From IMG/VR virus record IMGVR_UViG_3300022866_000322, positions 124,001-188,000 of that record: a stretch of DNA of 64,000 nt. The stretch is one strand, 5' to 3'. Positions 1,562-60,800 of this stretch are shown one piece after another. How positions within the stretch are numbered: the stretch's first letter is position 1; the number at the start of each line of letters is the position of its first letter. Below the pieces are notes generated by a model that was given only the letters and a program-made list of their open reading frames with translations, did no database searches and had not been told where the DNA came from. The position numbers and the translations under genes are program-made.

Positions 1562-1590
1562 TTGACAAAATCATTAACTGAGTATATAAT
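1562..1590 (+). promoter_or_regulatory. Consensus sigma70-type promoter
   Basis: TTGACA (1562-1567), 17 bp, TATAAT (1585-1590), upstream of the lipoprotein gene. Confidence 0.85.
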
Positions 1591-4856: not shown

Positions 4857-5393
4857 ATGATAAAGAAGAGACTTACCAATTCTACTGTGGAACAGCACGT
4901 ATATAATATGTGCCGGCAGATGGACCAATCCATGTGGCGTCCAGACATTGTAGTCGGATTAACACGTGGTGGTTTGGTTCCAGCAAACATGATCAGTCAA
5001 TACTTTGATGTACCATTAGAAACACTCAAAGTAAAACTACGTGACCTTCAGCCTGGCGAAGAAAATGAAAGCAAACATCATTTAGCGGGTTTAGCACATA
5101 CTGGCAAGCATGTACTAGTAGTAGACGATATAAACGATACTGGTGCAACACTGGACCATATATGTCGTGACTGGCAAACTAGTTTTTCCAACCCAAGGCA
5201 TTGGCGTTACTTGTTCAATAACAGTGTTAAATTTGCTATGTTGATTGATAACGAGTCAAGTAAATTTATGTACAACATTGACTACTATGGCGAACAAATA
5301 GATAAAAGTGTCGAGGATGTTTGGATTGAATTTCCTTGGGAAGTTTGGTGGGAACAGCACAGTAAATCAAGCTCATTTGTATTTGACAAATAG
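4857..5393 (+). CDS. Purine phosphoribosyltransferase (Gpt/Hpt-like type I PRTase)
   Basis: IVVGLTRGGLVPA, PRPP loop VLVVDDINDTGAT, WIEFPWE. Confidence 0.9.
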   Translation: MIKKRLTNSTVEQHVYNMCRQMDQSMWRPDIVVGLTRGGLVPANMISQYFDVPLETLKVKLRDLQPGEENESKHHLAGLAHTGKHVLVVDDINDTGATLDHICRDWQTSFSNPRHWRYLFNNSVKFAMLIDNESSKFMYNIDYYGEQIDKSVEDVWIEFPWEVWWEQHSKSSSFVFDK

Positions 5394-5924
5394 ATGGAAC
5401 TTAGCCCGTATGGTGGAGAAATAAAACAATTTTTTGATAACGAAACCTTGGGTTATTTTGCTCAAGTATTCAATTTGTTCACCCCTTCGAGAACAGAATA
5501 TCAAGCTATTTCGGATGCTCTGTGTGAAAAATTTAACACCAGTGGTGAAACCAGAAGAGAAGTACAAGAAGTCATCTTGCCGACAAATATTCTTAACCTA
5601 GTTACAGATAAACTGCGCACGTATTTTGGAAAAAACGCTTGTATTTCAGCCTGCTCATGTTGGCAAGATTATTCATATTATGAAAACAATCTGCACACAG
5701 ACGATGCTGACAGTGTTAACAATGTTCTTATTGTTGCAATAACAGCAGATCCATTTACAGGTACACAATTTTGGAGCGAAGATGAGCGGCAGTTTATATA
5801 CAGCATACTAGAGTACAACAAAGCATTTTATCTATTAGACAGCACAGAAATTATGCATGGTATGAAATTTTGGGTACCACTACATTTCCTAAGACAAAGT
5901 GTATATATTAACTTCAATAAATAG
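5394..5924 (+). CDS. Putative 2OG-Fe(II) oxygenase-like protein
   Basis: HxD (LHTDD), distal H (IMHGM), R (LRQSVY) spacing typical of DSBH dioxygenases. Confidence 0.55.
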   Translation: MELSPYGGEIKQFFDNETLGYFAQVFNLFTPSRTEYQAISDALCEKFNTSGETRREVQEVILPTNILNLVTDKLRTYFGKNACISACSCWQDYSYYENNLHTDDADSVNNVLIVAITADPFTGTQFWSEDERQFIYSILEYNKAFYLLDSTEIMHGMKFWVPLHFLRQSVYINFNK

Positions 5925-6002
5925 TTGCAACCGGCCTTTTCTGGCATTCAACCCGGTATACAAATTCTGCAAGCCTATGTTATAATAACTTTTAATATAG
6001 GA
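5925..6002 (+). promoter_or_regulatory. Structured 5' leader of queD (candidate cis-regulatory RNA)
   Basis: Nested pairings TTGCA/TGCAA, ACCG/CGGT, GCC/GGC, then CCTATGTTA/TAATATAGG covering the AGGA SD. Confidence 0.45.
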
Positions 6003-6010
6003 TAAACACA

Positions 6011-6511
6011 ATGAACAACCCAAGACAATACAAGTACGTGAGTACAAAAGAATATGTAGATCAGTTTCCTTGTGCATACAGGCAATGGAGAGCTGACAGT
6101 CACTGTAATCTGATACACGGCTATGCGTTTACAATGCGTTTCTTTTTCGGAACGGATGACTTAGACGTTAGAAACTGGGTAGCAGACTACGGTGGATTAA
6201 AAGAACTAAAAGGTGTACTACAAGATCAGTTTGATCATACGCTACTGGTTGCTGAAGATGATCCAGAACTAGAAATGTACAAGCAACTGCAAGCAAAGAA
6301 GATGGCTAAAATAACCATACTACCAAGACTTGGTTGTGAAGGACTAGCAGACCAACTGTACAAATATGTTAATGGTGTGTATATCCCAGACATGTGGGGT
6401 CAAGCAGAAGCAGACAGACTTTGGTGTTACCGAGTCGAGATACGTGAGACACAAAGCAACATGGCTTGGCGTGAAGGACACAGAGAATGGAACGAGGACC
6501 TGTTTGAATGA
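6011..6511 (+). CDS. queD: 6-carboxy-5,6,7,8-tetrahydropterin synthase (QueD/PTPS)
   Basis: SHCNLIHGY, DYGGLK, FDHTLLV, C-terminal ET motif. Confidence 0.9.
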   Translation: MNNPRQYKYVSTKEYVDQFPCAYRQWRADSHCNLIHGYAFTMRFFFGTDDLDVRNWVADYGGLKELKGVLQDQFDHTLLVAEDDPELEMYKQLQAKKMAKITILPRLGCEGLADQLYKYVNGVYIPDMWGQAEADRLWCYRVEIRETQSNMAWREGHREWNEDLFE

Positions 6512-6852
6512 GCTTGAAATATAGTTGGCATGACATTGGCGGTGACGTGGTTAAGGATACTGATGTTTATTTGCTTAAAGATAATAAAACTCTAAATAAT
6601 CTTGTATTAAGTTCTACAAAGTTATACAGAGGACAACGCACTAACGGACACAGGCACCCCGGTCAAGAAGAAGTATATGTATTTGTACAAGGCTGGGGAG
6701 AGATGATTGTTGGGGACGAAGACAGTGAACCATTTACTGTTGGCCAAGGTGATTACGTATTGATTCCAGACGGTGCATTCCACAGAGTCACAAACACTGG
6801 TGACATGAACTTGATATTCAATTGTATATTTGACGGAAAGAGAAATCATTAA
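6508..6852 (+). CDS. Cupin-domain protein
   Basis: GHRHPGQEEVY ... IPDGAFHRV cupin motifs. Confidence 0.85.
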   Translation: MSLKYSWHDIGGDVVKDTDVYLLKDNKTLNNLVLSSTKLYRGQRTNGHRHPGQEEVYVFVQGWGEMIVGDEDSEPFTVGQGDYVLIPDGAFHRVTNTGDMNLIFNCIFDGKRNH

Positions 6853-7703
6853 TGAAACTTAAAATAAGCGAACTGTTTTACTCAGTGCAGGGAGAAGGCC
6901 GTTACATGGGTGTGCCCAGTGTATTCCTGCGTACATTTGGTTGCAACTTCCAATGTGCTGGTTTTGGTATGCCTAGAGGCGAAAAGACAACAGAAGTGGA
7001 CGCTATTATTGAGCTGAACGATAAATTCAAATACAAAACCTATGGTGACTTACCACTGGTAAAAACAGGATGTGACAGTTATGCTAGTTGGCATCCCAAG
7101 TTTAGGCACTTGAGTCCTACATACGAAAACGACGAGCTGGCAGACATGATCGTGGATACACTGCCTTTTAAAGAGTGGCGTGAAGAACACTTGGTTATTA
7201 CAGGTGGCGAACCATTACTGGGTTGGCAACGTGAGTATCCTGACTTGTTGAATCAACCCAGGATGCAGAAACTAAAGGAAATAACAATAGAAACAAATGG
7301 CACGCAACCATTGCATGAGGACTTTAGGTATTTCCTAAGTGATTGGACCAGTCGCAGAAGTTCTAGTGCATTAACGTTTAGCGTAAGTGCTAAACTAAGT
7401 TGTTCGGGTGAAAAGAAGGAAGATGCTATTTGCCCTGATGTTGTAGCAGAGTATAGTCACTTTGGTTACACCTACTTGAAGTTTGTTATTGCGAACGAGC
7501 AGGATGCAGAAGAAGCATTAGAAGCAGTAAAAGAATACAGATTAGCAGGCTTTGACGGTCATGTATACTTGATGCCAGTTGGTGGCGACGAACATACGTA
7601 CAGGTTAAATAATAAAGCAGTAGCCAACCTGGCTATGCGAAATGGTTTACGTTATTCAGATCGACTCCAAGTTCCGTTGTTCAAGAATGAGTGGGGGACA
7701 TAG
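6852..7703 (+). CDS. queE: 7-carboxy-7-deazaguanine synthase (radical SAM)
   Basis: ISELFYSVQGEG, VFLRTFGCNFQC...GCDS, ITGGEP, IETNGT, RLQV; next to queD. Confidence 0.9.
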   Translation: MKLKISELFYSVQGEGRYMGVPSVFLRTFGCNFQCAGFGMPRGEKTTEVDAIIELNDKFKYKTYGDLPLVKTGCDSYASWHPKFRHLSPTYENDELADMIVDTLPFKEWREEHLVITGGEPLLGWQREYPDLLNQPRMQKLKEITIETNGTQPLHEDFRYFLSDWTSRRSSSALTFSVSAKLSCSGEKKEDAICPDVVAEYSHFGYTYLKFVIANEQDAEEALEAVKEYRLAGFDGHVYLMPVGGDEHTYRLNNKAVANLAMRNGLRYSDRLQVPLFKNEWGT

Positions 7704-12353: not shown

Positions 12354-12382
12354 TTGACATTTGGCCAGAAAGAGCTTATAAT
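12354..12382 (+). promoter_or_regulatory. Consensus sigma70-type promoter
   Basis: TTGACA (12354-12359), 17 bp, TATAAT (12377-12382); AAGGAG RBS before ATG 12415. Confidence 0.85.
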
Positions 12383-48829: not shown

Positions 48830-51800
48830 TCATGGAGTATAACTCCTCTCTGCTTTGATGTATTCAGCCCACTCAGTGGTACTAGAATCCAGTGTATCAC
48901 CAGTTCCGTATGCCTTCCATAAGTAGTCCTGTTTAATTGTTTTGCCTGTTACACTAACATTACCAGTACTAAGTACTTCACCTAGTATGTTAAGTGCGGA
49001 AACATTAGCTGTTGTTGTAGTGCCATTGATACTAACATTAGCATTAGCAATTCTTAGGTTGCCATCAACAAAGTCTACAGCAACCACATTGGCGTTTGCT
49101 ACAGTTTCAAGTATTCTAACATTTGCTGTAGGACCAGTCTGCGTTATGTAATCACCAATGTTAGCACTGATTGTGTTGTTTAACGACACACGCCATGTAA
49201 CATTTGCGGCTACTTTCTTTTCACCCGTTAGTGAGTTGGTTGTTGCTAGTGCTATGTTTGGTAACTGCTGTGCCAATGAGCTATCAACTACACGAGCATT
49301 GGCATAGTGTACGTTTGCACCAGTGCCGTCAACTCCTCTGCGCAACTGTGAAATTGTGTTGGCAAATACCTGCTTAACGTTTGATGTGTTGATGTATGCG
49401 TTAGCATTAGCAAACACATTTCCTAATACTAGGAAAACATTACTGCTGTATGTAATCAAACTATCTGTTGCAAACTCAGTGTTGGCTGTCCAAACATCAG
49501 CACTGAGCATTTTAGCATCATCATACTTCTGGTAGTAGTAAATCAATTCACCGTTGATGAATACCTCACCTGGTGAACCACCGACTCCAGTGCCTGGATC
49601 TGGTAGCAAGGCAGCGTTGTCAACAAATATGTTAACATCGTCAAGAGCCAAGTTAGCAGTAAGTGTTGTTGTACTGTTTGCACTTATTCGGTAGTAACTT
49701 CTGTCACGGTCCATTGGTTCAAACACTCTAAAGCCATAACTTGCAGTGTTTGACGCTGTATTAGTAAACACACGCATTTCAAGTGTGTCATACATTCTAC
49801 CCGGAACTAGTTCTTCTGGTGCATGACTATTGTAAGCATCTAAGTAGAAACCACCAGCAATGTTAATGTCCTCTGGTCTAGTTCCTAGTGCGGTGTCTGT
49901 GTAAAAACTTGCAATGTTGCTGTCAAGTAAGTCGTCAATGTACAAGTTACTGATCTTAACATTAGCAGTACCGGAACCTAACACATCCATAACATTAGCA
50001 GTAGTTGCAACACCATTTACGCGAACAACATTAGCATCAAGTTCTAAGAAACCTTGCTTTTCTTGGATAACTGCAATTTCTTTTACACTAGTATAGTTGT
50101 TCAACACTCTTGCGTTTGCAGTTGAATTAGTCTGAGTAATGTAGTCGCCTTCGTTTGCACTTATACTTTCACCTAACGACAACGTCACAATACTTTCGAT
50201 CGGTTGCCCACTTAGCATCATTTCATCACGTGACACGCTTACTACTCTGAACGTTGCATTGTTCTCAAAATTGAAGGTTTCGTACATGCCCTCAATTTTA
50301 ATAGGATCATTTAGATTAAAGCCACGGTCAACGAAGTCTACCTGTTGTGTGTTTGCACTAGTAATCTTATGACCTGTGTAGTTGAATCCAATTACATTGC
50401 TCGTTAAGGTAAAGCTGTTAGATGTAAACGTCTCTCCACTTATTTTATTACCAGGATAACTTGTACCAAACATCAATTGATTGATGTCTTTGCCTGGTCT
50501 TCCAAAACTTGGAACATAGTAACTGGTTATTCTATCTGCGGCACTAAGCAATACATTACCGCTATCAATTTCTGTAAAGCGTGTAAAGTCAAACACTGTC
50601 TGCGAACTTACATTTGCGTTTGTAGCCAAGTATGCTGTGTTGTTGTAGAATATAATGTTGCCACTTGTGATATACAAGTTGCCGTCTATTTGTGTAATTC
50701 CGTTGCTGTTGAAATCATACTGTTGTACAAAGTTGCCTACGTCATCTGCTACAAACAAGCGTGTACCGTCGTGTCTCATGTACAAGCCAGTTGGATTAGT
50801 TGCATTCAAGTCTGCTGAATTATTAAGTGTAGCAGTTGAGATATCCCATGCCGTTGAAAGTGTATAACTCCATATCTTGTTATACTGCTGTCCAGTTACA
50901 AACAGTTCTTTACCATCTTCTCTGAAGCGCATACCTGTTGGAATATTTTCTTCGCTAGCCACGCTCTTGCTTCGTGTGCTGTATGTTGCACTGCTTGCTA
51001 ACCACGGAATGCTAAGTTCATATTCAAACACTGTGTCATTTGCTGTGCCTAACACGTACATTCTTGTGCCGTCTGTACTGAATTCAACACTAGTTGCACT
51101 TGTTTCTTGGCTGTTAATGCTTACAACACTGATGTTAGCGGCTGTATTAACAAACCAAGGAGTAGCAAGTCTGTACTCGTAAACGCTGTTACTTGTATCC
51201 CCAACAGTGTACATGCGAGATCCGTCTTCTCTAAAGAACAAACCTTGCACACTGGTGTCTTGAACATTAACATTAGCTACAGCAACGTTGCTTGCCGTTG
51301 TAACTTCCCATGGTGTACCTAGTGTGTACTCATACACACTGTTTGATGTGTCGCCTGCGATATACATTTTAGTACCGTCAGGTTTGAAAAATACATCTGT
51401 AATAGTAGTATCTTGTGGAGCAACATTTGCATTGCCGTCAAGTTCTATTCTGTTCAAGTCATAGCTGTTTGCAAAGTTGCCATTTACTACAACAGTATCT
51501 TCGTATGCAACATTCGCGGTCCATTGTGCTACATTACTGGTGTAGGTTATTCTATCAAATTTAATTGTGCTGTCTATGCTTCTAACAGTGTTGTATCCAC
51601 CTTGGCTATCAAACTCACTGTTTAACATTGCATACGCTGTTGCACCCTCACCTGTGCCGTTAATTACCACGTTTGGTGTAGTAGTGTATCCTGATCCTGC
51701 CTTTGTAACAGTAATACTAGTTACAGTTCCATCAGCGGCACTAATTGTTGCAGTTGCATTGGCTCCTGATCCGCCACCTCCTGTTATTTCGACGTTTGGT

Positions 51801-54800
51801 GCAATGGTGTAATTTTGTCCTATATTGCCTACAATAATTTCACCAACTTTAAGTTTATAGTTGTCTGCATATGGCTGGTACAAGTCAGTTGTAAAATATG
51901 TACTGTCAGATGTAACCTGGATGTTTGGTGAGCGGAATGTATTTTCTTCTGCATACCAACGTGCCGGGATGTCAAAGTCTGTCCAACTACCAGTTGCAGT
52001 ATCAGTCTTTGTGTAAACTGGAGTAAACTCTTTAAGTTGTGTTCTGTATGGCTTTACTTCATCTATATACTGTTTATAAAAATCTTGATTATCTTTGCTG
52101 TAGGTTGGCAATTGCTCGAGTGATCTAAGATTATGTAATACATCAATAAAGCTGGTTTTAAATATCCAGTCTGGATTTTTCTGTTCTTCAAACACATAAT
52201 TTATTATTGTAAAGAATAGCTTATTAAAATCTGTAGCCAAACTGTTAATAAAAATTTGGGTGTACAAACTATCAAAAATATTTCCTATTTCGCTGCCTGC
52301 TTGCTTATCGAATGCTACTGCGTCAAACACAGCAGTATCAAAGCCCAAAGTTATTGTGGTGTCGTACAATAAGCTACTTAAAGTTACTGTGGCATTTTCT
52401 GCCGCAATCAAAGAAAGCTGTCCTGTGGTTTCGTATCTATATGTGGACCAGTTTCCTGCACCATCATCTAGTATTTTTATGTAGTCGTTGTTTGCCAATA
52501 CTAATTTTTGAATATCACCATACGTATTAACAGTATGCGCTATTGCATTACCTGCAATGTAAGTACTGTCATACCATTCCGAAGGTGTCCACCACAGGTC
52601 TGTCTTGTAACTCTGGCTACGTATTAAATCAAACTCTCTTGACGTGCCGTTGAACTCAAGCAATGACCATCTGTTTTCGTAACGACTATCTTGCGGAATT
52701 AAAATTGTATACCCATCAGCAAAACCTGTAGTGTCGAGATATTCTACATCTGTATATGATGCTACTTGTGCATCATAACTAGCAGGGAACGGTTGTTGTA
52801 CATACAAACTTGTTGCTGTAGTTGTTAGCAATACTGGGTGCAGTGCTAGTAGCCTGTTGGCTTCATTTACAAAAACTTCCAAGGCAGCTGATCTATCCAA
52901 GAACAGTCCTTGTCTAGGTCTAGAAAGTATCCCTAGCCTGTCTTGTGGTTTAAGTGTAATGTCGGGCACCAATCTACCTGTGCTGTCTTCACCACGTAAA
53001 CTATCTCGCAGTTTGTCTATTACACGTTGAGGGATGGCACTTGTAGTAGTGCCTTGCTGAACTAATCCAAATTCGTTGTGTATTAATTGATCGTTATTCT
53101 CAACAGTCGTGGTGTCCAAATGCAAAATAACATCACTGCCTGTGGTCTTGTCATTTATGTTGTACAAGTTTACACTACTAGGCGAAGTTAATCCTAGGTA
53201 AGGAATATTTTGATCCTTTGGACTTCTTATATATTGTTCTAATAGAGTAGTGCTGATCCGACGGTTTGCAGTTACTGGATCGACACTAGTCTTTCCACTT
53301 ACCCAATAATAATACTTGCTTACGATTATGCCAGTGCCAGGATCAACAAAAGTTGATTGTGTGTAAGCAGAGTCATCTGCATTCTTAGGCACACCATCTC
53401 CGCCATTACCTACATATTGACTAGGTAAAACATCGCTTTCTACCCATTCGTAAATTGTTACTGTACTTCCCGGGAACAAACTACCCCAATTAATACTTCT
53501 GTACAATAGTGTACTCTGCTCGTAATCAATAAAGTTAGCTACACTAGTGTCCCACCATGTCTTACCAATTTGTTGGGTAGTCCAGTAAAATGAATCATTT
53601 GATATGCCGGTGCTTGCTGTTGTTGTATTATAAGAAGCTGGGTCAAATTCCTCAATGTAATCTAGTTCCTGTTCAACAGCACCTAGTAACTTGCCTTTGA
53701 CAGGATCTAATATATCTAAATAATTTATTATTGTTTCTGATGTCTTATTATAAATGAACGCTGAATTAATTGCATCAATTGCTACCCTTGGTTCTTTGTA
53801 CCTAAGCAATTCCCATCCAGGTTTACTACCTTCGTTGTAGTATGTGTATACACTTCCACCGCCTACTGTAATGTCTGAATCATTAGTAACACCAATTACC
53901 ATGATATCATTTACAATATCAATATCAGCACCATAATCATCACCTGTCTCGACGCCAGGTGCAGTTAGTTTTTGGCTGAATGCAAATATTGATGGATTGT
54001 CTTCTGACTCGTAAGGGTTAGCTATGAGATCATATAGGTAAACTGCACCTGAATCTTTAACTATCTTAACAAACGTAGTAGATAAACTATCAAATATTGT
54101 AACTGTGTCAGCTATATCAAAAGTCGTAGGGGTTGTAGTATCTGCGCCTTCGCTAGATATTGCCAACTTACCAACGCTTTGGCTAATGCCTATCGCAGTA
54201 CCAAACTTTTCTCCAATTTGATTAGGATGGGTTACAACTTGCGTATGCTTGTAGATCTCTATTCCGAGATCAGTTAATCCGGTACCTGTGCTTGCAGAGG
54301 TAATGTTAAGTTTTTCTGTAGCAACTTGTACATTGCTTGTAATTTGTAGCCTCCAATGGCTTTCTGTTTCTCCCGACGTTACGTTACTAATAAACACCAA
54401 TGCATTACTTGCTGTTACTCCCGGAATACCTGTTCCATTAATGTCATTGGCTACGTCTGTTATAGTAGTTCCGGTAAATTCTACTGGCCTATCGTTAATT
54501 ACAATACTGTCACCTGAAGTAACAGTGGCGTTGCTCACTGTGCCTGTTACGTTACCGTAAACTCTTCCTGTGTTTACCAGTCTATAGACTGCTCCCGAAC
54601 TATATTGATTTGCAAAGTAGGAAGGAGCACTTCCGTATAGATTACAGCCAGTACCGCATAACTGAATATCAGTTCCGAATCTTTGTCCGTTGATTCCTGT
54701 CAAACTAGGAGAGATAATCTGATCTTGGACGAAGTTATTGGTTTCAACTGTTAGCGTAAGCCCTGCTGTTTGGACATCGGGAAACTGTACAGTACTTGGT

Positions 54801-57800
54801 GCGATTATATAATAATCAAGATCTTGGGTCAGTTCTACACCATTCAATAATACTCTGTAGCTGTTAGCAAAAGCGTCCGGGGCTGTGAATGATGCCGATG
54901 TACCGTCTGTAGTAAACTCTGTAATTGTTCTATGGTACGCATACAATAGTCCGTCGTTGCCCTGTGTCCCTACAACTGCTGTGTCACTTCCAACAGTAAG
55001 TACGCTACCGTCTGAATTAGTAGCAAGACTTGATCCAAAGTTTGTACTAGCGTTTCCAGTTATTGTTGTAAGATTTGTGTAGAAGCTACCACGGGTGAAT
55101 ACCTGTATAACGTCGTTAGTTGCTGGTGGTGTTACAAATGTTATCGTTTCGCCGCTAACACTGTATTCGATGGTTGGTACATACTCTACTGCACGTAGTT
55201 GTGAGTACACAAAAACTTCGGTTGGATCGCTTGTGAGTATGGATACGTTACTGAATGTGCCTGTAGCTACAGACTGCGTGTCCGATACAATGTTGGCTGC
55301 AACGTTGGCTCCATTGATTGCAATAAGATCTGTGTCAGTGAATGCCGCAACGTTTCCTGTAATAATAACAACATTAGTGTTAGTCAAAACTCTGGTGCTA
55401 TCAAACACAACTGTACCACTTGCTGATGATGTTGTACCTGGACTTTGATACGTTATGGTATCGTTTACTGCAACACTAACATTAGCATCTAGTACTAGGT
55501 TATATCGTTCGACTGGCAGCAGAACTGGATCAACTGCTGTTCTCAGGTTCAATTGATAACAGAAAACTTTATTTGCACCACTAGCACCAATATACAAATA
55601 GTTTGCATCTCTACTAATTGCCAAACTAGATCCAAACAAATCACTTGCGCTACCTGCGGCATCAGTTAATATTTGTTGTATGATACCGTCTTTAAAGATG
55701 TAAACATAGCCTTTTCCGCTCGAACTGTCTGGTGCGCTGACTGCAACATATCCTTGTGCATTTACAACTTTGTATCCGAAGCTGTCTAGTCCTGTACTGT
55801 TTGCACTTAAAGCAAAACTTGCTGTCCAAGAATTAGTAACGGATCTGGTAAATGCATTAACTCTACCCTCGCCTGACCCTGGCGAACCTACATACATCAA
55901 CTGAGCAAGATTAGGTTCTATACTAACTGTTCTACCAAAGTTATCATTGCCGGATAGTTTACTAGGATCTAGCTCCGCTTTGCTGTTATATACCCACGGG
56001 CTTGTTTTATTGTATACACCCCAATTTCCATCGTTGTCTAAATTTTCTACCCATACCTTATCATTTTCTAACCACCCACTTACTGGCATCACTGATTGTA
56101 TGTCAACAGGATTGCTTATCTTGGCGCTGGACAATCTATACAACAATCCCGACCCACTGATTACTGCTTCTTCCTGCAATGCTTCTAAGTTTCTTGTTAT
56201 TGTAATACTAAACCTAGTAGTGTCTATGATGTTGCCTACTTTATACGCCCCGTCAAATCTATCATCAAAGTTTTTAATAACAACTACATCATCAACTGCT
56301 AGTCCGTGATTTTCATTAAACACAACTTCTGCAGAACCGTCATCTCGGCTTCGCAGTATAAACACCAAACCGTCTATATAAGTTGCTCTGAATACATTCC
56401 AGCTACCGTTAAAGTCTTTAGCTACCCAAATCTTGTACCCTGTTCCTATTTTATCAATTGATGCAGATAATGAATCATAGTTATTTAAATTAAACAGTGT
56501 AGTGTCTACGTCTGCTAGGTTTACAAAGCCTGCCACTGGCAACGGACGTAGTAACGGAAACTGTGTTCTGTCTTCAGTCACAAATACATTTGCGTTGTAA
56601 GTGCCAGATATCTTAAAGATATCGTTTTCTATAATTGCAACTGTTCCTTCTTGGGCGGCGTTGTTGTTATCTGTAAACTGTATAAGTGTAGGATTTTTAG
56701 TAATTGCAGTGTCGCTCAACGGTGTTTCAATGAACGCATTTGTATCCAATGATCCGTATTCGCCTACACGCATAGCCCAGTTTTCATACCAGTCAATATC
56801 TGAATCTAAGTTGCCAAATATTCCACCTTCTAAAGCATTAATAGAGTTAGGTGTGCCTTTTTGTGTAATTAATCCTTGGTAATACTTTGACTGGGTAGTA
56901 ACGTCTATACCTAAGTCAGTAAAGTACTGTCTTTCTCTGAACCCAGTGATACCGTCACTGAATAATTGTATTTCTTCGTTAGCAGGTTGATTGTCTATAT
57001 CGTAGAAACTAACACCAAGTTGTGCGTTTGATGCAAGATTTCTCAACATTCCGCTTTGTAATTCTGCCTTGTCAAACTGCTTCCATTTCGTAGTTTGGAA
57101 ATTAGGATCGGCGGTTATGTTTTCTAACGCTGTATAGTATCTATTTTTATGCTGGACAATAGATCCTTTAAGGTAATCAGTTCCGCCGCCCCACGCATCG
57201 ATGCTATCACTGCTGAACATGAATCCTGGCAGTTCTAAACTTCCGTTCCAAGAATCAGTTTTGTATCCAACAAACTTTAATCTATATTGTCTATTACCTA
57301 ATTCCGGAACGTAGATAACATCATTGAATTCAGTAACGTTATCTAATATCAACAAGTGTTCTGTTTGTACTAAGTTTAGTTCAGCAAAACCCACTGACTT
57401 TTGTGCGTTGGATTGGAATGTAAACAAGTTATCTTCTCTATAAACCGAAAATTCGTTTTTATTAATTGGTTTAAAGTTTAGGTCAAGTACTCTACTGCCA
57501 AACGGTGCATTTTTTATCTCGTCTACAATTGCTGTTTGTTCGAATACCTTTAAAGTATCGCTCACAGGACTTAACACAAGAATATTATTAACACGCCATC
57601 CTTGTGTTGTCCAATGTAAGAATTCCTTAACACTTAGTATAAAATCTTTTTGTTGCTTGAGAGAGTCGTCATTGTCTACAAAAAGAAATCCTTGACTCTG
57701 TAGGAATCGCTGATAGCCTACTAAAAAATCAGTAACTTGTTGACTGGAATTAAATTCAAAACCATAAGGTATTGTAATTTTTTGTTTTTTAAAGTCTCTA

Positions 57801-60800
57801 AAGATTACAGCACTGGCATCACCGTCAGTAACTTGATATGCGTTATTGTTAGGCTCGCTAGGTATAATAGTAAAGAATGGGCTGGTTATATCATACCCGC
57901 TTACTGTATACCCATTGGCTGTTCTTTGTACAATGACAGCACTATATGTAATCTTCCTAATAGGGCTACCTTTGTATATCTTTAATGCATAGTTGTCATC
58001 GGGAATAACAACACTGTTGTTTATACTACTCGGACTGCTCTGCTCTGCCAGTAGTTCAATGAATTTTTTATCGGTATATCCTGCCACTTTGTTTAACAAT
58101 TGAACATTTAGTTTTGCTAAATTTTCTTGTATTACTGTAGGCGCTGAACCTGCACCTAAGTTGGTTATGTAATCTGTTATCCAGTTTAAGTACCCAGCAG
58201 TGCGTTGTGTTACACCGTTTGCATCTACGTACCCGTTAACATGAAGTGAGGTAGGGGTAAGGTGCTGACTTGTGTCAGTGATTTCAAATTGTCCAGTAAA
58301 ACTATTTCTTTTGTATCTATGTACGTCTGCTTGTAGTCCGTAAAATCTAGCAGGTTTTGTTAGTGCCAACGCTAACATTAACGCATATGGATATTCACTA
58401 CTGCGTCTCCATGCAAGTTCAACAGGACCTATATCTCCAACTGCATAACTTATATTAGCTCGACTACCATCAAAATCAGTGACGAGCATTTGCTCAGGAC
58501 TACGTAAGTTACCGTTATCGTCTACTGGTATAAATTCACTTAGGTTTGGTCTTTGGTAACGTAGATCAATACCTTGTCTATCGCCACTGTGTATGTAGCC
58601 TATACTTAAATCACTCCATAGGGTGCTATTTCCGCCTGTGTACGGAGAAACTCCATATCTGGTTTCCCAGTAGTCTGGCTTTTTGCTAAAGCCTAGCATT
58701 TCCCATGGATGCGTATGTGGTCTATCAGTGTCGTAGAAGTATCTGTAAATGCTTCTCCAGGTTCCTGGTAAAGTTTCACCATTGACTATATCTCTAAATG
58801 CTTTGTAGTTCCAAGTGAACGGATCGCTTGCACTAAAATAACTGTTTGTAGAAAAGTCAACTCTATTTGTGCCTACCCAGGCCAAAAATCCTTGGCTTAA
58901 AACTTGTGTAAATTCTGCTCTAGTATAGTCAGTGTCTCTGAATTTGCCGGGCACGTAGTCAATGATGTTAAAAGTATCAGTATCATATTCAACCTTGACG
59001 TTGTTATAAATTCTACGCTCTAGTTCTAATAACAGATCATCTCTAAAGTCATTAAAGGCGGGAGTAATACTACCATCATGTCCTTGAATTACATTTGCTG
59101 GTGTACGCAGTGTATTGTCTAAATACTTCTCAGGAATGAACTTAGGATACATTCCCATCTTTGTAGGAGTTTCTGGGATGAAACTTCCGTCTGTATCACT
59201 GTACTCTACAATATCTATCTTGTCTTCAAATAACAATCTAAAATTACTTGTGAAAGTTATTGCGGCACGATCTGTATTGAAGGTATAATCTCTGCCTTTT
59301 ACTACTAAGGTCTTTGTTGTAACATCATCTACAGTTCTAGTCACATAAACTAAAACAGATTTGTTACTCGGAATAGTGTCGTTGAATATACTTGTGATTT
59401 CGTATGCAGTGATCTCTGGGTCAAGAACAGTGTAAGTAGGAATCAATGATCTATTGTCATCTCCATGTGGTATCATGTCACTACGGAACCACGGGAAACT
59501 ACTGTTCTTAACGCTGTGCATTTGCAGAAGCACTGCATCAAAACTAGTCTGCACGTTGTTTAAATCTAACTCAATCTTTCCTGCAACTTCTAAGAAATTC
59601 TTCCTGAATTTTGAGTATTCTCTATTGGCTAATTTAATGGCGTTAATCGAATCCATCGTTGGGTGATTTAAAAACAGTCCTGCATACACTGCAGGGGCAC
59701 TATGCTGAAGTATACTTCCTGATGTGTTTTTATACACAATGTCTCTCAGGTTACTACTTCCAGGTACAGTACCCACAACACGTAAACTGTTATTTTTCAG
59801 CTCTATTAGATGATTCCTCATTTGCCCTAGTGTAACTGTAGACAGATTTTTATTCAAAGTATTGATGTCTAAGTTAATAGGAACTTCGTAGTGTGCGTTA
59901 GCAGTGACCGGTATATCTTTATTAAAGATAGCAACAAACACTGCATCGTTTTTTGTAATCAGATCTGGATTAACCAATACTGCAAATTTATCTACTACTT
60001 TTGTAGTTGCAAAGTTACCCACGCTTACAATCTTGTTGTTGACGTAAACTTTGATATGCGGGAAATTAGTACTAACGTCAGGCAAATTATCAATTGGGAA
60101 TAAATTAGTTACGCCGTCGTATACAAAATCATAAATTTTAAATTGTTTACTAAAATTGGTTGCAATTTCCCATACGTTGTCTCTGGCACATGTTGTAGTT
60201 GACACGTTCTTCTGTAAATAACCAGCATTCACTTTTTGTGGAGTTACAACATTGTTGGTCCCTGCCAGGTAAGTGAATGTTTGAGAATCAAAAGTGTTTT
60301 CAAATTCAATATCACCTTGATTCGTAAAGTTTTTGTAACTGAGAGGGAAACCCAATACTGTATCGTTACTGCCAGTTCCTCGCTTATAAGAAAATATCTT
60401 AGATCCAGTGAACGTTGTTCCAGTGAATGTACTTGCGTCGGAATAACTTATGCCTTTACTGTCAACTACGTCAAATAACGGTTCTTGGTTATTTGCAGTT
60501 TTCTCTTGCGCTATAGTCCAACTGAAGCCATTGAAGTACCATTGTTTACCACCATTGGTTCCTGACAGGACCAGCACAGTATTGTTGTCTACAACTGTTG
60601 CATCATCTGCTTCAACTAAGTATGCCTTGTAAACATCACTCGGGTCGTCTATTGCTTTTTCAATAGTAAAATTGTAAATTTTGTTTCTTACGTTGTCATC
60701 TAAGTCACTTGCAAATATAACTCTATCGCCGGTTGTAAGAGTGAGTGTCCCTATAGTAAAAACTGTTGTGTCGACCGATACCACACCTTGCACTTGTTGA

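What the first reader, a model, noticed from the sequence alone, without database searches (positions are those of the whole stretch)
5917..6013. Riboswitch-like structured leader that hides the queD ribosome-binding site
Seen: one of few long intergenic gaps (86 nt) in a compact genome. After an ATAAATA motif (5917-5923) come TTGCA(5925-29)/TGCAA(5968-72), ACCG(5930-33)/CGGT(5954-57) and GCC/GGC around TTTTCT. A 9-bp stem CCTATGTTA(5974-82)/TAATATAGG(5993-6001) then covers the AGGA SD of queD. Known: que genes are often controlled by preQ1 riboswitches and folE by THF-II switches, but this does not resemble the class I preQ1 consensus. Inference: a candidate new cis-regulatory RNA in a phage (pterin, 7-deazaguanine or GTP sensing, or a protein-binding operator). 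A TGnTATAAT at 5978-5986 could start a shorter transcript lacking the 5' arm, releasing the SD.
Basis: partly seen in the sequence, partly recalled or inferred. Interest (0 to 1): 0.7.

Follow-up and report, generated by a model that had tools for sequence, protein, structure and literature searches.

The report
New riboswitch-like pseudoknot before phage queD
The 86-base gap before the queD gene of this large T4-like phage encodes a small knotted RNA, conserved in over a hundred uncultivated phages and matching no catalogued RNA family, that most likely senses a metabolite and controls access to the queD ribosome-binding site.

Summary
The coordinates are all correct. Comparison rescues the finding.

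About 145 phage contigs carry the same leader, as 120 distinct aptamer sequences. It forms an H-type pseudoknot:
- P1: 5930-34 / 5953-57
- an invariant C at 5952
- an invariant ...A.A.A.UC.GC tail

Both helices covary (0 of 500 shuffles reach the observed score). The model finds one copy per genome. A QueD-like gene is the next ORF in 136 of 142 cases, and lies within 1 kb in every exception with enough sequence. No credible bacterial copy and no cultured-phage copy was found, and nothing in Rfam 15 matches.

The last two bases of P2 are the first two of the helix that hides the Shine-Dalgarno (5974-82 / 5993-6001). Other subfamilies overlap by 4-5 bases. A folded pseudoknot should therefore open the ribosome site, giving an ON switch; this is inferred.

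A T4-type late promoter motif (ATAAATA) puts the RNA start at P1. A conserved sigma-70-like promoter inside the leader would make a short transcript that bypasses the switch. The ligand is unknown and no binding was tested. The fold resembles preQ1-I but fails the Rfam model.

The parts
5917..5923 (+). ATAAATA, a T4-type late-promoter-like motif. It overlaps the TAG stop (5922-5924) of the upstream ORF. If the T4 spacing holds, transcription starts at about A5929.
   Evidence: 31 of 41 genome copies lie within 70 nt upstream of a same-strand gene start, against 4% expected. TAA[A/G]TA is found within 40 nt 5' of P1 in 114 of 139 leaders, most often 5-9 nt away. The phage has a T4-type Gp23 capsid protein.
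5930..5934 (+). P1 5' strand (ACCGG)
   Evidence: Pairs with 5953-5957. 99.5% paired in A2. Variants include AGCGG/CCGCU, ACCGG/CCGGU, AGUGG/CCACU, UGCGG/CCGCA and AGAGG/CCUCU.
5935..5942 (+). L1 (CCUUUUCU), a pyrimidine-rich loop with a conserved N-C-U start
   Evidence: A2 columns 10-11 are at least 90% C and U; length varies from 4 to 10 nt.
5943..5947 (+). P2 5' strand (GGCAU) of the pseudoknot
   Evidence: Pairs with 5971-5975. All 5 pairs show changes on both sides. Mean duplex energy is -4.75 against -3.26 +/- 0.13 for partner-shuffled pairs.
5948..5952 (+). L2 (UCAAC). C5952 is invariant and occupies the place of the specificity cytidine of preQ1-I.
   Evidence: Invariant CCC columns in A2. 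The comparison with preQ1-I features comes from PMC10622847.
5953..5957 (+). P1 3' strand (CCGGU)
5958..5970 (+). L3 (AUACAAAUUCUGC), a 13-nt tail of fixed length. Seven of its positions are invariant (A, A, A, U, C, G, C) and four more are at least 90% conserved. As DNA, 5957-5962 (TATACA) reads as a -35-like hexamer.
   Evidence: Invariant columns in A2. The tail is kept even in subfamilies that lack the internal -10 element.
5971..5975 (+). P2 3' strand (AAGCC). C5974 and C5975 are shared with the SD-hiding stem.
   Evidence: Blocking these bases weakens the SD helix from -8.4 to -2.3 kcal/mol in the model.
5974..6001 (+). P3, the SD-sequestering hairpin (5974-5982 paired with 5993-6001), which covers AGG of the SD
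   Evidence: Other subfamilies have different anti-SD stems (UGUCUU/GAGACA, AUGUCUU/GAGACAU, GUGUC/GACAU) that overlap the P2 3' strand by 4-5 nt.
5957..5986 (+). Embedded sigma-70-like promoter: TATACA, 18 nt, then TGTTATAAT (extended -10 at 5978-5986, in the P3 5' arm and loop). The predicted start near 5993 would give a transcript without the aptamer or the anti-SD arm.
   Evidence: The scan scores it 10 of 12 with TG. TAnnnT lies at 17-18 nt in 107 of 135 leaders, 105 of them with TG. The variants keep T1, A2 and T6.
5999..6002 (+). Shine-Dalgarno (AGGA)
   Evidence: Relatives have AGGAG at the same place.
6011..6511 (+). queD-like gene (T-fold / PTPS family), followed by a cupin gene (6508-6852) and a QueE-like radical SAM gene (6852-7703)
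   Evidence: PF01242 at 2e-13, phrog_2389 at 2e-34, phrog_2076 at 2e-54.

Best explanation
The leader of the queD-cupin-queE operon is a translational riboswitch candidate of a class not in Rfam.

Shown: the RNA forms an H-type pseudoknot. P1 is 5930-34 / 5953-57 and P2 is 5943-47 / 5971-75. The pyrimidine-rich L1, L2 ending in the invariant C5952, and a 13-nt largely invariant tail (L3) are conserved. The pseudoknot sits directly upstream of a helix that pairs with the Shine-Dalgarno. The element occurs once per genome and always in front of a queD operon, in many T4-like aquatic phages.

Inferred:
1. The pseudoknot is an aptamer for a small molecule from the GTP-to-pterin-to-7-deazapurine pathway. 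A ligand with a guanine-like face, read by C5952, is the best guess.
2. The 3' strand of P2 is also the start of the anti-SD strand. Ligand-stabilised P2 therefore pulls the anti-SD away, frees the SD, and turns translation ON.
3. Long transcripts that start at about A5929 from the T4-type late promoter (ATAAATA) carry the switch. Short transcripts from the embedded sigma-70-like promoter start near 5993, lack the aptamer and the anti-SD arm, and are translated without control.
For: Conservation:
- queD homologues gave 80 loci, and a motif pattern alone gave more than 120 further stretches, nearly all true copies.
- The 149 unique instances reduce to 120 distinct aptamers.

Covariation on a structure-blind MAFFT alignment:
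- 89.1% of cells pair against 73.1% in shuffles, and the covariation score is 0.383 against 0.125 +/- 0.009 (0 of 500 shuffles reach either).
- Slid controls score at most 0.115.
- P1 has 3 of 5 pairs changed on both sides, and P2 has 5 of 5.
- P2 duplex energy is -4.75 against -3.26 +/- 0.13 for shuffled partners.
- About 50 G-U cells would be A-C mismatches on the other strand, so the structure belongs to the sense RNA.

Specific association:
- The next ORF is QueD-like in 136 of 142 cases. In the exceptions with enough sequence, queD lies within 1 kb.
- The model finds one copy in the window's genome (51.5 bits, E 3e-15) and one in each of five 236-360 kb relatives.
- In 185,579 bacterial and archaeal genomes the only true copy is on an 8-kb contig in a MAG bin. 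No cultured phage has it.

RNA start at P1:
- TAA[A/G]TA lies 5-9 nt before P1 in most leaders. In a few subfamily members a sigma-70 -10 element ends 6-8 nt before P1, three of them with a perfect TTGACA-17-TGTATAAT.

Switch logic:
- P2 and the SD helix share 2 nt in the main type and 4-5 nt in three other platform types.
- Blocking the P2 3' strand lowers SD-helix stability from -8.4 to -2.3 kcal/mol in the window and from -6.9 to -3.9 in L012.
- The same block raises modelled RBS accessibility in 118 of 142 leaders.

Resemblance to preQ1-I:
- The features listed in PMC10622847 that are present here are the H-type pseudoknot, a 5-bp P1, an invariant C at the end of L2 and an A-rich start of L3.
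Against: - No ligand binding has been tested and the ligand is unknown.
- The window's own fold is not significant on its own (z -1.31).
- No preQ1-I, -II or -III model matches, even at E up to 10 on 111-126 nt.
- The first base of L1 is not the conserved U of preQ1-I, and the SD is not part of P2.
- An ON switch is unusual for a biosynthetic operon, since known preQ1 switches repress.
- The accessibility model is a weak test, because blocking any bases tends to open a structure. In the window itself the gain from blocking P2 is nil (0.69 against 0.69).
- P3 is mostly conserved rather than covarying, with only 6 compensatory cells.
- Three complete relatives lack TGT/DpdA and a credible QueC, and the QueD-like protein has CxxxHGY instead of CxxxHGH. 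The pathway product, and so the likely ligand, is therefore uncertain.
- Transcript starts are inferred from motifs only. The metatranscriptome contigs gave no end information.
Confidence: 0.6

Rival explanations
1. The pseudoknot is a protein-binding translational operator. A phage or host protein, possibly a product of the operon, recognises the pseudoknot at the 5' end of the mRNA and represses or activates translation. This would resemble the gene 32 leader pseudoknot of T4-like phages, which nucleates gp32 binding (recalled from established T4 biology, not tested here).
For: The phage is T4-like. The pseudoknot sits at the very 5' end of the mRNA and is followed by an A/U-rich stretch. 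One copy per genome fits an autoregulatory loop. No ligand is known.
Against: The many invariant unpaired bases (the C before P1 3', A.A.A, UC.GC) in a 46-nt knot, together with a preQ1-I-like layout, are typical of small-molecule pockets. The downstream enzymes (T-fold, cupin, radical SAM) are not known RNA binders. The operon's later genes vary between relatives while the RNA stays the same.
Confidence: 0.17
2. It is the same aptamer with opposite polarity. Ligand binding stabilises the pseudoknot, the SD hairpin stacks on it, and translation is repressed. This would be the usual feedback OFF logic of preQ1 switches.
For: All known preQ1 riboswitches repress (PMC10622847). P2 and P3 are adjacent and could stack. 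In the window, P3 keeps 7 A-U or G-U pairs even without the two shared C-G pairs, and modelled accessibility barely changes (0.69 against 0.69).
Against: P2 and the anti-SD strand share bases in every platform type, 2 nt in the main type and 4-5 nt in others, so both helices cannot be complete at once. No alternative partner for the SD is visible in the pseudoknot state.
Confidence: 0.15
3. There is no sensing. The knot is a constitutive 5' structure that stabilises the late mRNA or keeps the anti-SD strand occupied. Alternatively, the conservation is only that of two overlapping promoters.
For: Both promoter-like elements are conserved, and the L3 tail doubles as a -35-like hexamer. The single-sequence fold is not significant.
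Against: - Promoters cannot explain compensatory changes in P1 and P2, nor G-U pairs confined to one strand.
- UC.GC is invariant although it lies in the promoter spacer.
- The aptamer is kept in the subfamily that lacks the internal -10 element.
- A general stabiliser would not be restricted to one gene per genome.
Confidence: 0.08

Closest known systems
preQ1-I riboswitch (Rfam RF00522; types I-III)
   Same: It is an H-type pseudoknot with a 5-bp P1 and an invariant cytidine at the 3' end of L2, immediately before the P1 3' strand. L3 begins U-A-x-A-A-A. It is associated with genes of the 7-deazaguanine pathway and acts on translation.
   Different: The Rfam model gives no match even at E 10. 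L1 is 4-10 nt and begins C, U or A instead of a conserved U. L3 is 13 nt with an extra invariant UC.GC. P2 is 4-7 Watson-Crick pairs and does not contain the SD, which lies about 25 nt downstream in a separate helix. The predicted polarity is ON. It is found in phages only.
Other small H-type pseudoknot riboswitches (guanidine-III, SAM-II/SAM-V, preQ1-II)
   Same: They are compact pseudoknot aptamers of about 40-50 nt that control translation, with a pyrimidine-rich loop that may lie in the groove of the second helix. Guanidine-III is an ON switch. These points are recalled from the literature and were not tested here.
   Different: None of their Rfam models matches. The conserved bases and the gene association are different.
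T4 gene 32 mRNA leader pseudoknot (autogenous translational operator)
   Same: It is an H-type pseudoknot at the 5' end of one specific mRNA of a T4-like phage, upstream of an A/U-rich leader. This is recalled from T4 biology.
   Different: It binds a protein (gp32) rather than a metabolite and belongs to gene 32, not to an enzyme operon. No sequence similarity was tested.
Glutamine riboswitch copies in marine myophages
   Same: They are a precedent for a riboswitch carried by T4-like aquatic phages. The same paper notes that riboswitches are rare in phages (PMC9004378).
   Different: That class is shared with bacteria and is in Rfam. The present element was not found in bacterial genomes and is not in Rfam.

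Membership tests
preQ1-I riboswitch (RF00522) | Matches the Rfam covariance model | tested here: not met
   cmscan with permissive filters at E up to 10 on window 5905-6030 and on L012 3900-4010 gave no preQ1 family hit. The 2-kb scan also gave none.
preQ1-I riboswitch (RF00522) | H-type pseudoknot with a 5-6 bp P1 | tested here: met
   P1 is 5 bp and 99.5% paired. The P2 pseudoknot is supported by changes on both sides at all 5 pairs.
preQ1-I riboswitch (RF00522) | Highly conserved specificity cytidine in L2 next to the P1 3' strand | tested here: met
   The C before the P1 3' strand (window C5952) is invariant in 120 sequences. Its role in recognition is not tested.
preQ1-I riboswitch (RF00522) | Short L1 with a conserved U; a short A-rich L3 that runs directly into a P2 3' strand holding part of the SD | tested here: not met
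   L1 is 4-10 nt and begins C, U or A. L3 is 13 nt and ends UC.GC. The SD lies about 25 nt beyond P2 in a separate helix.
preQ1-I riboswitch (RF00522) | Binds preQ1 or preQ0 | not testable with these tools
   This needs in-line probing, ITC or SPR.
preQ1-II (RF01054) and preQ1-III (RF02680) | Matches the Rfam covariance model | tested here: not met
   No hit.
Riboswitch (general) | Conserved structured 5' leader with covariation, tied to genes of one pathway, with an expression platform that overlaps the aptamer | tested here: met
Riboswitch (general) | Direct, protein-free binding of a metabolite that changes expression | not testable with these tools
T4-type late promoter | TATAAATA-like motif about 6 nt upstream of the transcript start, placed before late genes of a T4-like phage | tested here: inconclusive
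   ATAAATA is enriched 18-fold before gene starts (31 of 41 against 4%) and is conserved 5-9 nt before P1. The phage has Gp23. The late sigma factor gp55 and the real 5' ends were not examined.
Sigma-70 promoter with extended -10 | A -35-like hexamer, 17 +/- 1 nt, then TGnTAnnnT | tested here: met
   TATACA-18-TGTTATAAT scores 10 of 12. It is kept in 105-107 of 135 leaders, with variation only at -10 positions 3-5. Activity was not tested.

The most novel reading that the evidence does not exclude
This is a phage-specific new riboswitch class. It would be a preQ1-I-like pseudoknot with enlarged loops that activates, rather than represses, translation of a QueD/QueE operon in response to a pterin or 7-deazapurine pathway metabolite. 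It would be wired so that late-promoter transcripts are regulated while an embedded early sigma-70 promoter bypasses it. It occurs in phages that lack DpdA and QueC, so the pathway product may itself be new.
Probability: 0.4. Interest if true: 0.88.

Novelty: new variant of a known kind. Interest (0 to 1): 0.8.

Why it matters
Riboswitches are rare in phages, and the few known ones are copies of bacterial classes (PMC9004378). This element is abundant in aquatic T4-like jumbo phages and was found in no credible bacterial genome among 185,579 species. No catalogued RNA family matches it. If it binds a ligand, it adds a riboswitch class and shows how a phage meters a 7-deazapurine or pterin pathway.

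It would also give a chemical handle on what that pathway makes in phages that have QueD and QueE but no QueC or DpdA. The promoter-inside-the-switch layout would be a compact way to make regulation depend on the stage of infection. The aptamer is only about 46 nt, so it suits structural work and ligand screening.

Tried and rejected
- Rfam scans at three scales gave only chance-level hits, such as freshwater-2 at 15 bits against a 49.9 gathering score.
- Single-sequence folding was not significant.
- BLASTN of the locus and of a typical leader against 50,697 GenBank phages found no homologue. The closest cultured QueD is 53% identical.
- RNAalifold on the first MAFFT alignment, A1, returned zero pairs. 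MAFFT had shifted the P1 5' strand of some rows. I re-aligned trimmed aptamers as A2 and counted named pairs instead.
- An intrinsic terminator for the upstream gene is rejected, because the scan found none there and no U-tract is present.
- A second copy before folE or elsewhere is rejected: the model finds one copy per genome.
- A bacterial origin is not supported: 11 of 12 genome hits are chance matches inside coding sequence.
- Metatranscriptome contigs of relatives about 90% identical cover the leader, but they give no direction or ends and may be DNA.
- Literature searches for a described motif found nothing.
- The accessibility model is kept only as weak support.
Full report
**1. What is in the sequence**

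The window is part of a 221-kb IMG/VR virus record (G000:C1:124001-188000, 40% G+C). CheckV rates it 63% complete, and it was assembled from salt-lake metagenomes. The phage is T4-like: it encodes a Gp23-type major capsid protein (PF07068, E 1e-98).

The upstream ORF (5394-5924) has no credible family match. It ends with a TAG at 5922-5924. The queD-like gene starts at ATG 6011, so the gap is 86 nt as stated. The genes that follow, and two nearby genes, are:
- queD-like, 6011-6511 (PF01242; phrog_2389, E 2e-34)
- a cupin, 6508-6852
- a QueE-like radical SAM enzyme, 6852-7703 (phrog_2076, E 2e-54)
- a phosphoribosyltransferase, 4857-5393
- FolE, 864-1556

As a single sequence the fold is unremarkable: -17.9 kcal/mol against -14.3 +/- 2.8 for shuffles, z -1.31. 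Rfam 15 has nothing credible there.

**2. Comparative evidence**

A search of IMG/VR for QueD relatives returned 217 hits, and 80 loci were kept. In about 50 of these the gene is preceded by a recognisably homologous leader, even where the upstream gene differs (L003 and L009 against the window).

All but about six of these are true copies. Parsing gave 149 unique instances and 120 distinct aptamer sequences, which I aligned with MAFFT without any structural guidance (A2).

**3. The structure is an H-type pseudoknot**

- P1 (window 5930-34 with 5953-57) is 99.5% paired. Variants include AGCGG/CCGCU, ACCGG/CCGGU, AGUGG/CCACU, UGCGG/CCGCA and AGAGG/CCUCU. The fetch pattern constrained only the 3' strand, so the matching 5' strands are independent evidence.
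It pairs the 3' part of the P1 loop (5943-47, GGCAU) with the bases just after an invariant CUGC (5971-75, AAGCC). Neither strand was constrained by the search.
- P2 pair types include GGCG/CGCC, GGUG/CACC, GGCA/UGCC, GGCAU/AUGCC, GACGC/GUGUC, GACAU/AUGUC, GGGC/GUCC, GGCU/AGCC and ACGAC/GUCGU.
- For P1 and P2 together, 89.1% of cells pair against 73.1% in shuffles. The covariation score is 0.383 against 0.125 +/- 0.009 (0 of 500 shuffles), and slid controls reach at most 0.115. All five P2 pairs and three of five P1 pairs show changes on both sides.
- About 50 cells are G-U. These would be A-C mismatches on the other strand, so the structure belongs to the sense RNA and not to DNA.
- Unpaired positions are strongly conserved. 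L1 begins N-C-U. L2 is UCA(Y)C, ending in an invariant C (5952). The 13-nt L3 reads N-U-A-N-A-A-A-Y-U-C-U-G-C. Seven of its positions are invariant and four more are at least 90% conserved.

**4. Specificity of the element**

A covariance model of A2 (R1) finds exactly one copy in the window's genome (51.5 bits, E 3e-15; the next hit is 13.9 bits). It also finds exactly one in each of five relatives of 236-360 kb, three of them rated 100% complete (50-67 bits). All five relatives are Gp23-type phages.

The first ORF after the element is QueD-like in 136 of 142 cases. In the exceptions with enough sequence, a QueD-like ORF follows within 1 kb on the same strand.

A scan of one genome for each of 185,579 bacterial and archaeal species gave 12 pattern matches. 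Eleven are chance matches inside coding sequence, about the number expected. The twelfth is a true copy on an 8-kb contig binned with a Chitinophagales MAG, probably phage DNA. No GenBank phage has the element, and no paper describing it was found.

**5. Where the RNA starts**

ATAAATA occurs 41 times in the genome. Thirty-one copies lie within 70 nt upstream of a same-strand gene start, against 4% expected. This fits the T4-type late promoter TATAAAT(A), which PMC9004378 cites as the known T4-like late promoter.

In 114 of 139 leaders a TAA[A/G]TA motif lies within 40 nt of P1, most often 5-9 nt before it. In T4 the start is the sixth base after the motif (my own knowledge). That places +1 at about A5929, one base before P1.

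In a subfamily that lacks this motif, several members have a sigma-70 -10 element ending 6-8 nt before P1, three of them with a perfect TTGACA-17-TGTATAAT. Two unrelated promoter types therefore put the transcript start at the aptamer. That outer helix is kept in only 4 of 141 leaders. The GCC/GGC hairpin is not supported either (61% paired against 58% in shuffles).

**6. The expression platform**

In 114 of 141 leaders a stem of at least 6 bp, usually CCUAUG/CAUAGG, covers AGG of the SD. It is 96.7% paired in A1, with a few compensatory changes such as CCUAUA/UAUAGG and CUCUAUU/AAUAGAG.

Its first two bases (C5974, C5975) are the last two of the P2 3' strand. Other subfamilies use different anti-SD or anti-start stems (UGUCUU/GAGACA, AUGUCUU/GAGACAU, GUGUC/GACAU). 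These overlap the P2 3' strand by 4-5 bases. P2 and the SD-hiding helix are therefore mutually exclusive, at least in part, in every design.

In the model, removing the P2 3' strand from play weakens the SD helix from -8.4 to -2.3 kcal/mol in the window and from -6.9 to -3.9 in L012. It also raises RBS accessibility in 118 of 142 leaders. That second test is weak, and in the window itself it shows no gain. I infer an ON switch: the folded, ligand-bound pseudoknot frees the SD. The opposite polarity remains possible.

**7. The embedded promoter**

As DNA, the start of L3 reads as a -35-like hexamer (TATACA in 50 leaders, TTTACA in 45, with occasional TTGACA). Seventeen or 18 nt further on, in the 5' arm and loop of the SD hairpin, lies TGnTAnnnT. 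It is present in 107 of 135 unique leaders, 105 of them with the TG. The variants (TATAAT 69, TAAAAT 20, TATCAT, TACAAT, TATTAT, TACACT and others) change only positions 3-5 of the hexamer. The background frequency of TGnTAnnnT is 0.2% per position.

This is the signature of selection on a -10 element rather than on a hairpin loop. The window's copy is TATACA-18-TGTTATAAT (5957-5986). Transcripts from it would start near 5993. The aptamer is retained in the subfamily without this -10 element, so the conservation of L3 is not merely promoter conservation.

**8. What it resembles and what it may sense**

The topology and several landmarks match preQ1-I as described in PMC10622847: an H-type pseudoknot, a 5-6 bp P1, a specificity cytidine at the end of L2 and an A-rich L3 lying along P1. 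It fails the family test in other respects. There is no Rfam match, L1 and L3 are long, L1 has no conserved U, and the SD lies outside P2. I therefore treat it as working like a preQ1-I-type aptamer but not as a member of that family.

The ligand is open. Three complete relatives have no TGT/DpdA-family gene and no credible QueC. Yet DpdA has been found in all phages known to carry 7-deazaguanine DNA (bioRxiv 10.1101/2023.04.13.536721). The QueD-like protein has CxxxHGY where QueD has CxxxHGH. Downstream genes vary among relatives and include sugar-nucleotide enzymes, UvdE and a SPASM radical SAM enzyme.

A guanine-faced 7-deazapurine (CDG, preQ0, preQ1 or 7-deazaguanine) or the QueD substrate dihydroneopterin triphosphate are the candidates I would test first. 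An ON switch would fit induction by a substrate or precursor better than feedback by the end product.

**9. Verdict**

| Claim | My estimate |
|---|---|
| A conserved, covarying cis-acting RNA pseudoknot with an SD-hiding platform | shown, about 0.95 |
| It is a metabolite-sensing riboswitch | inferred, about 0.6 |
| Its polarity is ON | inferred, about 0.55 |
| Its ligand is a 7-deazapurine or pterin intermediate | a guess, about 0.4 |

It appears to be undescribed, phage-specific and abundant, which makes it a strong candidate for experimental follow-up.

Noticed in passing
G000 genome coordinates 33288, 33971, 40162, 57750, 209274 (+); 14667, 60688 (-); others (outside the window): Eleven of the 41 ATAAATA motifs sit exactly 5-6 nt before the ATG of an ORF of at least 50 aa, with no room for a Shine-Dalgarno. 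If transcription starts at the sixth base after the motif, as in T4, these late mRNAs would be leaderless and begin at the AUG.
   Followed up: partly
window 6011-6511; relatives G002-G004: The QueD-like protein has C-N-L-I-H-G-Y where QueD has CxxxHGH. Three relatives rated 100% complete carry the leader and queD/queE but no TGT/DpdA-family gene and no credible QueC. The pathway may therefore not end in the usual DpdA-inserted 7-deazaguanine DNA base.
   Followed up: partly
window 4857-5393 and 864-1556: A phosphoribosyltransferase (PF00156) and FolE lie a few kb upstream of queD, separated from it by an 812-aa FG-GAP repeat protein. A phosphoribosyltransferase next to 7-deazapurine genes recalls nucleoside-antibiotic-type pathways (from memory). 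Its role here is unknown.
   Followed up: no
window 48830-62989 (-): A single ORF of 4,719 aa lies among virion-structural-like genes.
   Followed up: no
window 1562-1590 (+), 12354-12382 (+), 2801-2774 (-): There are three perfect TTGACA-(16-17 nt)-TATAAT promoters. The genome has 11 with TTGACA-(16-18 nt)-TATAAT. The host therefore probably uses a canonical sigma-70.
   Followed up: no
alignment A2, columns 9 and 21 (window 5935 and 5944): The first base of L1 correlates with a base of the P2 5' strand (CG 41, UG 35, UA 14, AU 6), although the three-pair hairpin as a whole is not supported. It could be a base triple or a transient alternative pairing.
   Followed up: partly
L211 (contig CAZXGO010000106.1, 8 kb): The only true copy of the motif among 185,579 prokaryote genomes lies on a short contig binned into a Chitinophagales MAG. 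It is probably phage DNA in the bin and is at best a weak hint about the host.
   Followed up: no
L074 5650-7878; L022 5743-7292; L132 9282-10325; L133 168-1265: Downstream of queD/queE, relatives carry varied genes: a C-methyltransferase, a cupin, short-chain dehydrogenases, GDP-mannose 4,6-dehydratase, UvdE and a SPASM radical SAM enzyme. The regulated operon is not uniform.
   Followed up: partly
window 5300-7700: Marine and salt-marsh metatranscriptome assemblies hold contigs about 90% identical that span the upstream gene, the leader and queD. Close relatives are therefore widespread and may be transcribed through the leader, although DNA carry-over cannot be excluded.
   Followed up: partly
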